From Perna viridis (Eukaryota), in assembly GCA_037379345.1 (NCBI GenBank), contig CM074525.1:3915170-3979169 (forward strand): a DNA stretch of 64,000 nt, given 5' to 3'. Positions 1 through 41,833 of this stretch are shown piece by piece. Every line of letters starts with the position of its first letter. Position 1 is the stretch's first letter. Under the pieces are notes generated by a model, which saw only the letters and a program-made list of their open reading frames with translations, did not search any database and had not been told where the DNA came from. The position numbers and the translations under genes were made by a program.

Positions 1-463
1 TGTGTTTTAAATTATTTAAAAGATAATGAAATTTCATATTTTATCCTTATTTTCAATATTTTTTATCCAAAAAGCATTTAATTTATGCCAAAAACTTAAA
101 ATTTTGGAAAAAAATTAGTTAATTTTCAAATTTTAATTAAATTTTACAGAATTTAAATTTTGCTATGGTCAAAAACAAGATGTTAATTACAACTTTAATA
201 TATACTGAACAGTCTAAATTGCAAAAAAAGTGAGTAAAAAGCCATTTTCAGTTCAAAAATGGGATGTAATGAACCCTACCACATATGACTATTTTCACTG
301 TAAAATTACTGTTCAGGCCAATATAAGGTACCTTCATATTTTGAGCCATTTTTCGAAAAATCCTTAACGAAAATTTTTAAAACTTGAAATTTCATATCGC
401 AAGTTCCGTACTATGTGGTAGATGCAATAAAAACAAGTTTGAAAGCAGAAAAGGTGTTCTTTA

Positions 464-934
464 GGTTACAGACCACCAATTGCATCATCAACTTTGGAAC
501 GTACGCAAAAAAAGTCCTACGCAAACAAAAAAATAGTCCCTTTGTCATGCTATTATACAAAATCTAGGAATCATTTTTACATAAATGGAACTTCTGCTGA
601 AAGATAAATTCATTTTGATCATTTTGAGCCCAAATTTGCCTACTTTTGATAGATATAAGTTATTTTTTTGAAATGTAAACAAAGAGTGGCTAAATAAAGA
701 AAATTGAGAATTCCAGTTACTATTTTTAGGGGTGGGTGAGTTCCGAATGACAGTGCTTCACTGCAAGTCTGCTAACCCCTTGTTTCCTCTTGACTGAGAT
801 ACCCTGATACATGTAGGTTTCAGGTGATATATGGTTATGAGCAGGTTAAAGTTAAGGTAAATATTTGAGAAGCCTTTGAAAATGGTCAATTTAACATAGG
901 GAGCAATGGGAAACTGAATTAGTGGTTTTTAGCC
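464..934. repeat. LTDR copy 1 (471 bp) with imperfect terminal inverted repeats
   Basis: Left end GGTTACAGACCACCAATT (464-481) vs reverse complement of right end GGCTAAAAACCACTAATT (917-934): 14/18 match. Flanked by TTTA (460-463) and TTAA (935-938). Right end independently fixed by the array junction at 41833. Confidence 0.8.
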
Positions 935-1014
935 TTAACTGGGAAATTGCACGTGCAGCCTTGACATTAAAAATAACTTGTACCTTCTGAATTAGATTTT
1001 TCTTGAAATATCTT

Positions 1015-1395
1015 ATGAAAATGGATCAAGACAAGTGGATTGAAGCTCAAAAAGAAAGACTTTTGGCCAATTCTGAGGCTCAAGGGGCTAAAGGATGCAT
1101 TTTGTGTAAATTAGGGGGAGGGGGCAGAAGATATTCCACACTAACTGTAACTTTTCCCTGGAAAAGAGATAAAAAGACAATATATACTCATAGATTTGCA
1201 TTTATGTTGTTTACCAAGAATTTTGAACTACCTAAAAGCATGCAAGTATCACATAGATGTCATAATAGGAGGTGCATTAATGTGGAACATTTGTCCCTTG
1301 AGCCGGAGCAGGTCAACAAGGACCGTGAACACTGTCGCGGCCTTGTACCCACTCACTGTGCAAAACATTCTCCATATTATGATTGCATTTTATAG
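1015..1395 (+). CDS. His-Me finger (His-Cys box) homing-endonuclease-like protein, copy 1
   Basis: Motif YTHR...VSHRCHNRRCINVEHL...N..R..C as in I-PpoI-type zinc-binding nucleases. ORF track starts at TTG 1003; first ATG is 1015. Confidence 0.88.
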   Translation: MKMDQDKWIEAQKERLLANSEAQGAKGCILCKLGGGGRRYSTLTVTFPWKRDKKTIYTHRFAFMLFTKNFELPKSMQVSHRCHNRRCINVEHLSLEPEQVNKDREHCRGLVPTHCAKHSPYYDCIL

Positions 1396-1518
1396 GGTAA
1401 AGGTAACATATCACACATTATTTCTGTACAACAAGTCTAAACATGTACTAATTATTTACACTATTTACATCACAGTAAGGGAGGTAACTACATCAGTTAA
1501 CCACACAGGCATTGTACA

Positions 1519-38601: not shown

Positions 38602-38724
38602 GGTAAAGGTAACATATCACACATTATTTCTGTACAACAAGTCTAAACATGTACTAATTATTTACACTATTTACATCACAGTAAGGGAGGTAACTACATC
38701 AGTTAACCACACAGGCATTGTACA

Positions 38725-40668
38725 CTAAGTACTGGGCTTTGCCTTTGGCACTTTTGGGTCAGAAATACCCTTTCTATAATGAACCTGGTAGTTTTTTGTC
38801 GCATGTAAGTTATATTTCCTTTGACGTGTTCTAGACCTTAGACATTTTGTGCTCTTTAGCTTTTTATATTGTCTACCATATACTTCAGCTTTCTGATTTT
38901 GTTTCAGATGTTTGATAACAGATGACCCATGTGTAAGCTCAACACCAAGTATCTTTGTACGAAGTAAGGTTGAATTACCAAACTTGTGATTACTTAAGTG
39001 TACCGCAGTATGTACACGACCTGGGAAGTTTCTACTATGAGTGACTGTTTTAGGATTACACCTCTGCAGACTGCGATTAAACGCTTCACATTTTTGGGTC
39101 GAGGTAAGAAAACGTACTAAGTCAAGACTTTTAGGCCCTAAAAGTACATTAATACAATTCTCTACCATGACTTCATCCTCATCATTCATATTTATAACCT
39201 CATTGTCAGGCAGAAAAACCTTTTTCCACTTATTAGAGGATAGACCAGCACACACATAAGAATGAATTTGGCATGCCGTACCGCATTCTCCATTATAACA
39301 TTTTATAATTGCTTTGATAGCGGTTGGCATATGGTGTTTTATTTCAAAAAGTTCACCCTTGTGTGTTTCAAAAGCTTTGTTTAGTTCTGCAACGCAGCGA
39401 GTTTTTAAATCCATACTAAAACGGTGCTTAAGGTTTCTCTTATTAGGACCAGTAAACATGGATGGGCTGAATGTATACTTTTGCACAGCTCTTTTGATAC
39501 CAATTGATAGATGTCTAACATCTTTAAGTACATGTACACTTGTTCTTTGAGCTTTTTCTACACCAGTAGCAGATTTGCTATCACCATCAGTAGTAATATG
39601 CCTAACTTGCAATGCATCATTCAACTGAATAGTGCATTTTCTAACATATACAGCCTCATTACCTATTGCATCATCTTCAGCCAAGTTAGCTGAACAGTAC
39701 CCAGCATGGTCAGGACATGATACTTCAATACCCTTGTTTCGTAACCGAGATGCAACTCTGCATAGCTTATTACCAGTGAACACGCTAATAATTCTCTTAA
39801 GCGAGGAATTATTTTCAACTATAGTTTGGACAACTTGCGTACCACCTTGAAATGCAGTCACGTCACTATTATAAATGCGATTATTGAAGCGACCATCTGA
39901 TTCAACATTCACATAAGTAGGGTTTGAGTGACCAACCATCTCATTTTCAGCTACAATATCTTCCCTTATTTCTTTCATATCACCTTCATTGTACCTAACA
40001 ATTACAGTTCCAACCCTATTTGCAAGTTTTTGCATGCCAGATAGATTAGGAGGGATAATGTTACAAGTTATGCTTATATCCCTATAGCTCTTGCTTGATA
40101 TGGGAGTTGTTTGTAACCCTGCCTGTAAAGCCATATTTAGAGTTGCTGCCTTTCTACCTGGCTTAGTAGTATTTACTTCATAATACAGTTTGTAGAACTG
40201 GCCTCTAAAACCACATTTGTTACATTTTAATCTCTCTTTCCATGCATAACCCCACTTTTTGGCTGCATTAGAGTCAAAATCTAAGTCACCGTCACAACCA
40301 TTACTTTCAACTATATGCTCTTTTATTGTAGTATTCCACAGTATGCTTACAAGAGAGGGAATGTAATGTTTATATGTGTGGTTGTCTGGATCAGAGACAT
40401 TTGGCTCAAGATATTCATCAAGTAACTCAGGACTTTTTGGCCGTGGCCGCAGCAGCATGGGAGTGCAAAGGGACTGGTCAGTGTCATGGATTTCCAGAAC
40501 ATTGTCACTACCTTGACTTACTCTAGATTCATAAACAGTATGAGGTAATCTCATAAGAGGCTCAGGGTCATTTTTGGGCTCATATTTAAGTTTCTTACCC
40601 TTATGAATAGGAGTATTTCCTTCCTGATATCCAAATTTTTTACCAATAAGTTTCCGCTTGCGGCTCAT
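38725..40668 (-). CDS. DDD/E transposase, copy 11
   Basis: Intact 647 aa. Confidence 0.88.
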   Translation of the reverse strand: MSRKRKLIGKKFGYQEGNTPIHKGKKLKYEPKNDPEPLMRLPHTVYESRVSQGSDNVLEIHDTDQSLCTPMLLRPRPKSPELLDEYLEPNVSDPDNHTYKHYIPSLVSILWNTTIKEHIVESNGCDGDLDFDSNAAKKWGYAWKERLKCNKCGFRGQFYKLYYEVNTTKPGRKAATLNMALQAGLQTTPISSKSYRDISITCNIIPPNLSGMQKLANRVGTVIVRYNEGDMKEIREDIVAENEMVGHSNPTYVNVESDGRFNNRIYNSDVTAFQGGTQVVQTIVENNSSLKRIISVFTGNKLCRVASRLRNKGIEVSCPDHAGYCSANLAEDDAIGNEAVYVRKCTIQLNDALQVRHITTDGDSKSATGVEKAQRTSVHVLKDVRHLSIGIKRAVQKYTFSPSMFTGPNKRNLKHRFSMDLKTRCVAELNKAFETHKGELFEIKHHMPTAIKAIIKCYNGECGTACQIHSYVCAGLSSNKWKKVFLPDNEVINMNDEDEVMVENCINVLLGPKSLDLVRFLTSTQKCEAFNRSLQRCNPKTVTHSRNFPGRVHTAVHLSNHKFGNSTLLRTKILGVELTHGSSVIKHLKQNQKAEVYGRQYKKLKSTKCLRSRTRQRKYNLHATKNYQVHYRKGISDPKVPKAKPST

Positions 40669-41362
40669 TTCCTGCCTTCACTCTTACTAAAACTGCTTTT
40701 AAATGAAATTTTTTGGCATGAAATACAAGAACAACTACTCTGTGTATTAAATAACTGCTAATTAAACAGGAAATTTATAATTATTTCAAATTGCAGACCA
40801 CACCTGGCATCCCCCCTGTGAAAGCCATAAAATGCCATTTATATGGGTATCTGATTAGAAATCTCTTGGGGGCATGTTATAAGGAATATATTATCTACCT
40901 GTGTTTTAAATTATTTAAAAGATAATGAAATTTCATATTTTATCCTTATTTTCAATATTTTTTATCCAAAAAGCATTTAATTTATGCCAAAAACTTAAAA
41001 TTTTGGAAAAAAATTAGTTAATTTTCAAATTTTAATTAAATTTTACAGAATTTAAATTTTGCTATGGTCAAAAACAAGATGTTAATTACAACTTTAATAT
41101 ATACTGAACAGTCTAAATTGCAAAAAAAGTGAGTAAAAAGCCATTTTCAGTTCAAAAATGGGATGTAATGAACCCTACCACATATGACTATTTTCACTGT
41201 AAAATTACTGTTCAGGCCAATATAAGGTACCTTCATATTTTGAGCCATTTTTCGAAAAATCCTTAACGAAAATTTTTAAAACTTGAAATTTCATATCGCA
41301 AGTTCCGTACTATGTGGTAGATGCAATAAAAACAAGTTTGAAAGCAGAAAAGGTGTTCTTTA

Positions 41363-41833
41363 GGTTACAGACCACCAATTGCATCATCAACTTTGGAACG
41401 TACGCAAAAAAAGTCCTACGCAAACAAAAAAATAGTCCCTTTGTCATGCTATTATACAAAATCTAGGAATCATTTTTACATAAATGGAACTTCTGCTGAA
41501 AGATAAATTCATTTTGATCATTTTGAGCCCAAATTTGCCTACTTTTGATAGATATAAGTTATTTTTTTGAAATGTAAACAAAGAGTGGCTAAATAAAGAA
41601 AATTGAGAATTCCAGTTACTATTTTTAGGGGTGGGTGAGTTCCGAATGACAGTGCTTCACTGCAAGTCTGCTAACCCCTTGTTTCCTCTTGACTGAGATA
41701 CCCTGATACATGTAGGTTTCAGGTGATATATGGTTATGAGCAGGTTAAAGTTAAGGTAAATATTTGAGAAGCCTTTGAAAATGGTCAATTTAACATAGGG
41801 AGCAATGGGAAACTGAATTAGTGGTTTTTAGCC
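41363..41833. repeat. Terminal LTDR (copy 12), right end of the array
   Basis: Complete 471-bp LTDR followed by non-array sequence (TCTA CACGGG...) instead of TTAA CTGGG. Confidence 0.85.

What the first reader, a model, noticed from the sequence alone, without database searches (positions are those of the whole stretch)
1..41833. Over 41-kb concatemer of an intact transposase + homing-nuclease DNA transposon with shared LTDRs
Seen: at least 11 complete, near-identical 3694-bp units with both genes intact. A single 471-bp LTDR separates neighbours, and the array ends cleanly at an LTDR terminus. Known: the transposase + His-Me nuclease + LTDR design is that of KolobokP. Inference: independent cut-and-paste insertions would leave two LTDRs plus a TSD at each junction. 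One shared LTDR instead implies recombinational amplification: unequal LTDR exchange, or a one-LTDR circle that is rolling-circle amplified or repeatedly reintegrated. A DNA transposon behaving as a coding macrosatellite is the most striking feature here. I cannot verify whether arrays this long have been reported.
Basis: partly seen in the sequence, partly recalled or inferred. Interest (0 to 1): 0.85.

Follow-up and report, generated by a model that had tools for sequence, protein, structure and literature searches.

The report
Tandem KolobokP transposon array, 12+ units
This is a real head-to-tail array, about 45 kb long, of at least 12 near-identical, intact copies of a KolobokP DNA transposon at one insertion site; the design and its multimers were published in 2022, so it is a large, clean example of a known thing.

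Summary
The window carries a 3694-bp period from position 1 to 41833. The array starts 3,231 bp before the window, at G000:C15:3911939.

- **Structure.** It is (LTDR-INT)12-LTDR: 13 identical 471-bp LTDRs (GG..CC, with imperfect inverted ends) and 12 INT segments of 3223 bp. One perfect 4-bp TSD (TCTA) flanks the whole array. Four uninterrupted paralogous copies of the host sequence confirm the target site.
- **Genes.** Eleven units have an intact 647-aa transposase and an intact 126-aa His-Cys-box nuclease. The twelfth unit is cut by the N gap.
- **Gap.** The 253 bases on either side of the gap are the same unit phase and are identical. The true unit count is therefore 12, or 13 and more.
- **Family.** Every KolobokP feature I tested is met (Kojima and Bao 2022, PMC9587614). 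That paper already reports TSD-flanked (LTDR-INT)n-LTDR multimers and the unequal-crossover, circle and nuclease-induced models.

New details found here:
- A substitution shared only by the three adjacent units at the left edge shows stepwise growth in place.
- Larger arrays of other KolobokP families exist in this genome: at least 62 kb on C13, and about 137 kb on C8 judged from gene spacing alone.

The scan has already noted KolobokP elements elsewhere in this genome.

The parts
1..41833 (-). Window part of the (LTDR-INT)12-LTDR KolobokP multimer. The whole array is G000:C15:3911939-3957002 (45,064 positions including 13 N) and starts 3,231 bp before window position 1. The element's own orientation (transposase on the direct strand) is the minus strand.
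   Evidence: 3694-bp period at 99.9-100% identity; 13 LTDR starts; the last unit is 3693 bp.
4158..4628 (.). Representative 471-bp LTDR (GG..CC). The first 18 bases of its two ends match as inverted repeats at 14 of 18 positions. The other copies are at 464, 7852, 11546, 15240, 19200, 22894, 26588, 30282, 33976, 37670 and 41363, each 471 bp and identical.
   Evidence: Solo copies lie at C13:18645002 (100%) and C4:17670293 (99%).
4629..7851 (-). Representative INT (3223 bp). On the plus strand it begins TTAA and ends TTTA.
5213..7156 (-). Transposase, 647 aa, single open frame. Start codons of the copies end at window 3462, 7156, 10850, 14544, 18504 (the gap-interrupted copy), 22198, 25892, 29586, 33280, 36974 and 40668.
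   Evidence: Pfam PF20700, E 4.8e-48. Invariant D258, D361/D363 and E528, the D383xxH386 motif, and a Cys/His cluster at 457-473. Its motifs appear in the KolobokP alignment of PMC9587614. Intact in 11 units.
4709..5089 (+). His-Cys-box (His-Me finger) nuclease, 126 aa from the first ATG, convergent with the transposase. The copies start at 1015, 4709, 8403, 12097, 15791, 19751, 23445, 27139, 30833, 34527 and 38221.
   Evidence: Pfam PF05551 E 4.2e-13 and PF13392 E 2.7e-7. I-PpoI match at E 2e-4, with the residues aligned to S97, H98, C100, C105, H110, E114, N119 and C125 conserved. Identical protein in all array units.
17849..17861 (.). Assembly gap (13 N) inside the sixth unit's transposase gene.
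   Evidence: the flanks overlap in repeat phase by 253 identical bases, so the number of units across the gap is unknown.
41834..41837 (.). Right copy of the 4-bp target-site duplication TCTA. The left copy is at C15:3911935-3911938, outside the window.
   Evidence: four paralogous empty sites read GGGGA-TCTA-CACGG with a single TCTA.

Best explanation
A young, autonomous KolobokP DNA transposon (LTDR-INT-LTDR, 4165 bp between GG and CC) inserted once, by its DDE transposase, into a ~1.5-kb repeated element. That element lies in a tRNA-Glu/tRNA-Gly gene array. The insertion made a 4-bp TCTA duplication.

The copy then grew in place to (LTDR-INT)n-LTDR with n of at least 12. Growth came from repeated out-of-register homologous exchange or repair between its 471-bp LTDRs, on sister chromatids or homologues. 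Each event adds or removes whole 3694-bp units and leaves one LTDR per junction.

- **Shown here:** the structure, the single TSD, the empty sites, intact genes, and a variant shared by adjacent units.
- **Inferred:** exchange between LTDRs as the engine of growth.
- **Speculative (about 30%):** the element's own His-Cys-box nuclease makes the breaks that start these exchanges, as Kojima and Bao proposed.
For: **Structure.** 13 identical 471-bp LTDRs and 12 INT segments with a constant 3694-bp period, and no double LTDRs or internal TSDs.

**Single insertion.** A perfect TCTA lies on both sides. It is single in four paralogous empty sites on C1, C2, C3 and C7.

**KolobokP features.** These come and match the paper.

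**Growth in place.**
- G at unit position 2074 (F309 instead of L309) occurs only in the three adjacent units u01-u03. All other units and the three dispersed monomers carry T.
- u03 then has a private change.
- So at least two rounds of local duplication followed that mutation.

**Youth.** There are 6 variant sites in about 44 kb.

**Generality.**
- Several other KolobokP families form arrays in this genome: C11, 4 units with a 474-bp LTDR; C13, at least 62 kb; C8, about 35 nuclease copies spaced about 3972 bp apart.
- A 13.9-kb contig from another sample is wholly a multimer of a family with a 67% identical transposase.

**Transposase not needed in cis.** The C13 array multiplied a unit whose transposase carries the same frame break in both units I checked in full (identical stop positions). 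All 17 C13 units scored carry the same stop count. Its nuclease frame is open in every copy scored.
Against: - The unit count, and whether the array is the same on both haplotypes, rest on the assembly, which has a gap inside the array.
- Exchange between LTDRs and local reintegration of an LTDR-INT circle give the same product, so individual steps cannot be told apart from sequence.
- Nothing here shows that the nuclease cuts the LTDR or any site in the element.
- Some small arrays also have intact nucleases. The link between nuclease integrity and array size is therefore anecdotal.
Confidence: 0.82

Rival explanations
1. Growth came from circles. Recombination between two LTDRs releases a 3694-bp LTDR-INT circle. 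The circle reintegrates by homologous recombination, or with help from the transposase or nuclease, into an LTDR of the same locus. Each such event adds one unit.
For: This is one of the two published models (Fig. 5b of PMC9587614). It leaves the same one-LTDR junctions and an unchanged TSD. Solo LTDRs of this family exist, as expected by-products of circle release.
Against: A free circle has no reason to re-enter next to its source. Yet the G2074 variant is confined to three adjacent units at one edge. No circle junction can be looked for without reads.
Confidence: 0.12
2. There was one burst of rolling-circle replication of a one-LTDR circle. The resulting concatemer was then inserted as a whole by the transposase, using the outermost LTDR ends.
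For: The units are extremely similar, with 6 variant sites in 12 units. The array has clean LTDR ends and a normal TSD.
Against: A single burst predicts only private variants, not one shared by three neighbouring units followed by a private change in one of them. No rolling-circle enzyme is encoded in the unit. Transposing a 45-kb segment would be unusual.
Confidence: 0.03
3. The array is an assembly artefact. The true locus has one or two units, and the assembler over-expanded the repeat.
For: The array contains a gap whose flanks are the same 253 bases of the unit. This shows that the assembler could not walk through it. No reads could be checked.
Against: - Units differ at specific sites in an ordered pattern: u01-u03 share one variant, and u03, u10, u11 and u12 have private ones. 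Copy-paste expansion would not create this pattern.
- Many other arrays of other families occur in the same assembly.
- A multimer also occurs in an unrelated sample, and multimers are reported in the literature.
Confidence: 0.03

Closest known systems
KolobokP DNA transposons (Kojima and Bao, Mob DNA 2022, PMC9587614)
   Same: - LTDR-INT-LTDR composite design with an LTDR of the ~450-bp class.
- LTDRs with their own short inverted ends and RR..YY termini.
- A 4-bp TSD.
- A DDE transposase plus a convergent His-Cys-box nuclease.
- Solo LTDRs and TSD-flanked (LTDR-INT)n-LTDR multimers.
- The closest named transposase relatives are from Mytilus (63-65% identity), a genus in which the paper catalogued KolobokP families.
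   Different: - No family in the paper's Table S1 has the published-style size of this one (4167 bp with a 473-bp LTDR; 4165 and 471 bp when measured GG..CC). The nearest is KolobokP-1_BaPl at 4169/470.
- Its terminal 12-mer is not in their consensus file.
- The multimers I saw in the paper were dimers to tetramers. I read only part of the supplement, and no maximum is stated.
- Here n is at least 12 with every complete unit coding-intact. Arrays of about 17 and about 35 units of other families occur in the same genome.
Tandem arrays of LTR retrotransposons and TRIMs that share LTRs
   Same: One repeat is shared between neighbouring units, and solo repeats arise as by-products of recombination between direct repeats.
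   Different: Those elements replicate through RNA, and their multimers can arise by template switching. Here there is no reverse transcriptase, the repeats have inverted ends, and the element is a cut-and-paste transposon.
Bacterial IS26/IS6 pseudo-compound transposons and translocatable units
   Same: Directly repeated mobile ends flank a cargo. A circle made of one repeat and one cargo can re-enter at an existing repeat and build arrays.
   Different: In IS26 the transposase is encoded in the repeat. Here the repeats are non-coding, the genes sit in INT, and a homing-type nuclease is added.
I-PpoI-type His-Cys-box homing endonucleases of group I introns
   Same: The nuclease matches I-PpoI directly (E 2e-4) with the catalytic and zinc-binding residues conserved.
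   Different: It is not inside an intron or a ribosomal RNA gene. Its target is unknown. It is about 35 residues shorter than I-PpoI.

Membership tests
KolobokP | Long terminal direct repeats of about 450 bp or about 660 bp at both ends of an internal region | tested here: met
   The LTDR is 471 bp. Dispersed monomers with the LTDR-INT-LTDR layout occur on C3, C4 and C8.
KolobokP | Each LTDR has its own short terminal inverted repeats, with 5'-RR and YY-3' termini | tested here: met
   GGTTACAGACCACCAATT against the reverse complement of the other end, GGCTAAAAACCACTAATT, matches at 14 of 18 positions. The termini are GG and CC.
KolobokP | Target-site duplication of 3-5 bp that flanks monomers, solo LTDRs and whole multimers | tested here: met
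   The array has TCTA on both sides, and TCTA is single in four empty paralogous sites. Solo LTDRs have TAGCA and ACTA. Read as 4 bp, the three young monomers have imperfect duplications; this is unexplained.
KolobokP | DDD/E transposase of the Kolobok superfamily, with a C/DxxH motif and a zinc finger before the last catalytic residue | tested here: met
   Invariant D258, D361/D363 and E528; D383xxH386; conserved C457, C466 and C473. The strings STQKCEAFN, TTDGDSK and TGNKLC occur in the paper's KolobokP transposase alignment. Pfam labels the domain 'Mutator-like' (PF20700). No phylogeny was built here.
KolobokP | Small His-Me finger (His-Cys-box) nuclease downstream of the transposase on the complementary strand | tested here: met
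   A 126-aa open frame convergent with the transposase. It hits PF05551 and PF13392 and matches I-PpoI with the catalytic residues conserved.
KolobokP | Solo LTDRs and (LTDR-INT)n-LTDR multimers coexist with monomers | tested here: met
Non-coding satellite or macrosatellite | A tandem array with no mobile-element ends, no TSD and no dispersed single copies | tested here: not met
   The array has transposon ends and a TSD. Three dispersed monomers are 99.8-100% identical to the array units.

The most novel reading that the evidence does not exclude
In this genome KolobokP elements act as self-expanding coding macrosatellites. Arrays reach tens of units (12+ here, about 17 on C13, about 35 on C8). 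Their growth would depend on the element's own homing-type nuclease rather than on its transposase. Supporting signs are that the 62-kb C13 array multiplied a transposase-dead but nuclease-intact unit, and that the arrays with broken nucleases (C11, C4) have only four units. If true, this would be a second, nuclease-driven way for a DNA transposon to replicate, seen at a scale not yet described.
Probability: 0.25. Interest if true: 0.65.

Novelty: new member of a known kind. Interest (0 to 1): 0.35.

Why it matters
This locus is one of the cleanest natural examples for testing the published idea that KolobokP copies itself in two ways: by transposition, and by nuclease-induced unequal exchange.

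- It has a defined insertion site with empty paralogues.
- Every complete unit is intact.
- The units differ at a few ordered marker sites that record the order of duplications.
- The same genome offers a natural comparison set: arrays with broken transposase or broken nuclease.

It also shows that near-complete assemblies reveal KolobokP arrays far longer than the dimers to tetramers I saw in the original description. For the scan, it is a known kind of element and should not be ranked as a discovery.

Tried and rejected
- **Reads.** There is no test of depth, spanning reads, circles or expression.
- **Tandem Repeats Finder.** It reports nothing because its longest period is 500 bp. Self-BLAST was used instead.
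- **First TSD reading.** With a 473-bp LTDR (AGG..CCT) only 2-3 bp appeared duplicated. The paper's convention of GG..CC termini resolves this to a perfect 4-bp TCTA and a 471-bp LTDR.
- **Species guess.** I guessed Perna viridis from the genome size. Its three catalogued families do not match (LTDRs of 461, 456 and 452 bp). The species is not identified.
- **Literature searches.** A search for PF20700 found nothing. A search for later work on long KolobokP arrays found nothing specific.
- **Nuclease target.** A scan of the unit for semi-palindromes gave only weak candidates, none inside the LTDR. The LTDR alignment shows conserved ends and one conserved internal block, but nothing decisive.
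- **Rejected readings.** Independent side-by-side insertions are rejected because there are no double LTDRs or internal TSDs. A plain satellite is rejected because the array has transposon ends, a TSD and dispersed monomers.
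Full report
**1. The observation**

A self-BLAST of one 4-kb stretch against the window gives hits spaced exactly 3694 bp apart at 99.9-100% identity. They run from position 1 to 41834, and nothing similar lies in 41835-64000. Tandem Repeats Finder is blind to this period.

The window is G000:C15:3915170-3979169, in a 723-Mb assembly of 46 contigs. 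I fetched 40 kb upstream.

In total there are 13 LTDR starts. Spacing is 3694 bp throughout, except 3960 across the gap and 3693 for the last unit. The 12 LTDRs inside the window are each 471 bp and identical to one another.

**2. The gap**

The 13 N at 17849-17861 lie inside the sixth unit's transposase gene. The sequence left of the gap stops at phase 2766 of my query. The sequence right of it resumes at phase 2514. The 253 bases on each side are identical.

The two sides are therefore not continuous as written. Either they overlap, giving 12 units, or at least 3441 bp, and possibly whole further units, are missing, giving 13 or more. The array as written covers 45,064 positions (C15:3911939-3957002). 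That equals 13 x 471 + 12 x 3223, minus 1, plus 253, plus 13.

**3. Anatomy of a unit**

- **Transposase.** Each unit has a 647-aa open frame on the minus strand. It matches Pfam PF20700 ('Mutator-like transposase') at E 4.8e-48.
- **Nuclease.** Convergent with the transposase is a small open frame on the plus strand, 126 aa from its first ATG. It matches PF05551 (zinc-binding loop of homing endonucleases, E 4.2e-13) and PF13392 (HNH_3).
- **Nuclease residues.** Against solved structures the nuclease matches only I-PpoI (E 2e-4). The residues aligned to S97, H98, C100, C105, H110, E114, N119 and C125 are conserved.
- **Transposase residues.** Aligned with 14 relatives, the transposase keeps invariant D258, D361/D363 and E528, a D383xxH386 motif, and a Cys/His cluster at 457-473 before the last acidic residue.
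- **LTDR ends.** The LTDR starts GGTTACAGACCACCAATT. The reverse complement of its end reads GGCTAAAAACCACTAATT. This is 14 of 18 matches, with GG and CC termini.

**4. One insertion site**

The 1.5 kb that surrounds the array, 918 bp on the left and 582 bp on the right, is itself a repeated element. Its copies on C1, C2, C3, C7 and C9 are 97-100% identical.

In four of those copies the site is uninterrupted and reads GGGGA-TCTA-CACGG. At the array it reads ..GGGGA-TCTA-[GG..array..CC]-TCTA-CACGG... The whole multimer therefore sits at a single insertion site with a perfect 4-bp duplication.

My first reading, with AGG..CCT ends, gave only 2-3 duplicated bases. The paper's figures mark the termini as GG..CC, which settles the LTDR at 471 bp and the TSD at TCTA.

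**5. Other copies in the genome**

- Three dispersed monomers with the LTDR-INT-LTDR layout lie on C3, C4 and C8. They are 99.8-100% identical to the array units, with both genes intact.
- Solo LTDRs lie on C13 (100%) and C4 (99%) with TSDs TAGCA and ACTA. Older solo or partial copies are 83-98% identical.
- An old, broken copy lies on C6.
- Hundreds of candidates match a related LTDR-like family at about 74% identity. Those I examined have GG..CC ends and mostly TWWA flanks.

**6. What is known**

Kojima and Bao (Mob DNA 2022, PMC9587614) defined KolobokP by exactly this design. It has LTDRs of about 450 or 660 bp with their own inverted ends and RR..YY termini, and TSDs of 3-5 bp. [quoted passage not shown]

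They report solo LTDRs and TSD-flanked multimers (LTDR-INT)n-LTDR as common. They propose three routes to multimers: unequal crossover between LTDRs, reintegration of an LTDR-INT circle, and nuclease-induced unequal repair.

Several links tie this element to their family:
- The motif strings STQKCEAFN, TTDGDSK and TGNKLC from this transposase, and SHRCHN from the nuclease, occur in their alignments.
- The closest named proteins are from Mytilus coruscus and M. edulis at 63-65% identity. Their paper catalogues KolobokP families in both species.
- No family in their table has this element's size. The nearest is KolobokP-1_BaPl at 4169/470. The terminal 12-mer is absent from their consensus file. 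This is probably an uncatalogued family, but a member of the group by every feature tested.

**7. How the array grew**

Among the 12 units there are six variant sites.
- G at unit position 2074 (F309 rather than L309) is found only in u01, u02 and u03. These are the three units at the left edge. All other units and all three monomers have T.
- u03 has one further private change. u10 has one private substitution and u11 two. u12 has a 1-bp deletion upstream of the transposase gene.

A mutation shared by three neighbours and absent elsewhere means that unit was duplicated in place at least twice after it mutated. That pattern fits stepwise out-of-register exchange between LTDRs. It is possible but less natural for free circles. 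It does not fit one rolling-circle burst.

Independent insertions side by side are excluded. Every internal junction is one LTDR in the same TTTA/TTAA context, with no internal TSD.

All five substitutions in the array fall in the transposase frame and change the protein. With five events this is not significant. It suggests no purifying selection within the array.

**8. Other arrays**

Searching the genome with the transposase and with a nuclease shows that multimers are widespread among several KolobokP families.

| Array | Size | Transposase | Nuclease |
|---|---|---|---|
| C11:141391-156819 | 4 units of 3739 bp plus a final 474-bp LTDR | Intact | TGA stop in three units |
| C13:36032064-36094174 | 16.8 units of 3701 bp (at least 62 kb), cut on the left by a 200-N gap | Same cluster of stops at residues 510-542 in both complete units checked | 134-aa frame open in every copy scored |
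| C8:44290060-44426615 | About 35 open nuclease frames spaced about 3972 bp apart (about 137 kb) | Open in the four units scored | Open |

I could not fetch the C8 array, so its continuity is not verified.

A 13.9-kb contig from an unrelated sample (ENA ERZ25067879) is entirely a multimer of a family with a 67% identical transposase.

The window's array is thus neither unique nor the largest. The C13 case shows that a unit can multiply without a working transposase of its own. That agrees with recombinational growth and is compatible with a role for the nuclease. Small arrays with intact nucleases also exist, so the link is only a lead.

**9. What could not be done**

There is therefore no read-level test of unit number, haplotype state, circles or expression. 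The argument that the array is real rests on three things:
- the ordered unit-specific variants;
- the many other arrays in this assembly;
- the independent contig and the literature.

**10. Verdict**

Ten gap-free units lie in the window and eleven in the whole array, and the count is uncertain at the gap.

The kind of element, its multimers and the proposed mechanisms were published in 2022. This is a new and very clean member of a known kind, not a new kind. Its value lies in its scale, and in serving as a natural test bed for the nuclease-induced model.

The scan has already noted KolobokP-type elements elsewhere in this genome.

Noticed in passing
window 42893-47867, 53155-55701, 62757-63341; also L031 135-5138: The array sits inside a tandem array of tRNA-Glu(TTC) and tRNA-Gly(GCC) genes on opposite strands. 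The tRNA array has a 1.22-1.24-kb unit at 98-100% identity and continues on both sides of the KolobokP array.
   Followed up: partly
L031 5850-6767 plus window 41834-42416: The direct host of the KolobokP array is a ~1.5-kb repeated element that interrupts the tRNA array where a tRNA-Gly gene is expected. Copies 97-100% identical lie on C1, C2, C3, C7 and C9. Some are within about 0.2-0.9 kb of other tRNA genes (Arg-TCT, Leu-AAG, Ser-TGA), which suggests an element that targets tRNA genes.
   Followed up: partly
window 48888-52691 and 56753-60604, minus strand: Two long open frames (1267 and 1283 aa) of non-LTR retrotransposons also interrupt the tRNA array. Each carries endonuclease, reverse transcriptase and zf-RVT domains.
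   Followed up: no
G000:C13:36032064-36094174 (L047-L049): A KolobokP array of another family spans at least 62 kb, about 17 units of 3701 bp. The transposase has identical stop positions in both units checked in full and the same stop count in all 17 units scored. The nuclease frame is open in every copy scored. The left end is an assembly gap.
   Followed up: partly
G000:C8:44290060-44426615: About 35 open nuclease frames are spaced about 3972 bp apart, with intact transposase frames where scored. This suggests a KolobokP array of about 137 kb.
   Followed up: no
G000:C11:141391-156819 (L051-L053): A (LTDR-INT)4-LTDR array has a 3739-bp unit and a 474-bp LTDR. The 703-aa transposase is intact in all four units. 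The nuclease has a TGA stop in three of them.
   Followed up: partly
L002, L003, L004 (monomers on C3, C4, C8): The three young monomers are each followed by TATA and preceded by TTTA, TAGA and TTTA. Their 4-bp duplications are therefore imperfect, despite about 100% identity to the array. TTTA is also the last four bases of INT. On C3 and C4, TATA lies just outside those four bases. Possible explanations are carry-over of donor flank bases, or chance in TA-rich targets.
   Followed up: partly
L054 (ENA ERZ25067879, contig of 13,907 bp): This contig from another sample consists only of repeated pairs of transposase (646 aa) and nuclease (124 aa), spaced about 3.5-3.7 kb apart. It is a KolobokP multimer of a family with a 67% identical transposase.
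   Followed up: partly
L017-L030 and many more places in G000: A very abundant family of ~470-bp solo units is about 74% identical to this LTDR. They share the same GGTTACAGACC..GTAGCC ends and mostly TTAA, TTTA or TATA flanks (821 first-look candidates). The family probably corresponds to the non-autonomous KolobokP family that the scan noted elsewhere.
   Followed up: partly
window units u03, u10, u11 and u01-u03: All five substitutions that distinguish array units lie in the transposase frame and are non-synonymous: R304K, F309L, S257L, Q213L and A394T. None lies in the LTDR, the nuclease or the spacers.
   Followed up: yes
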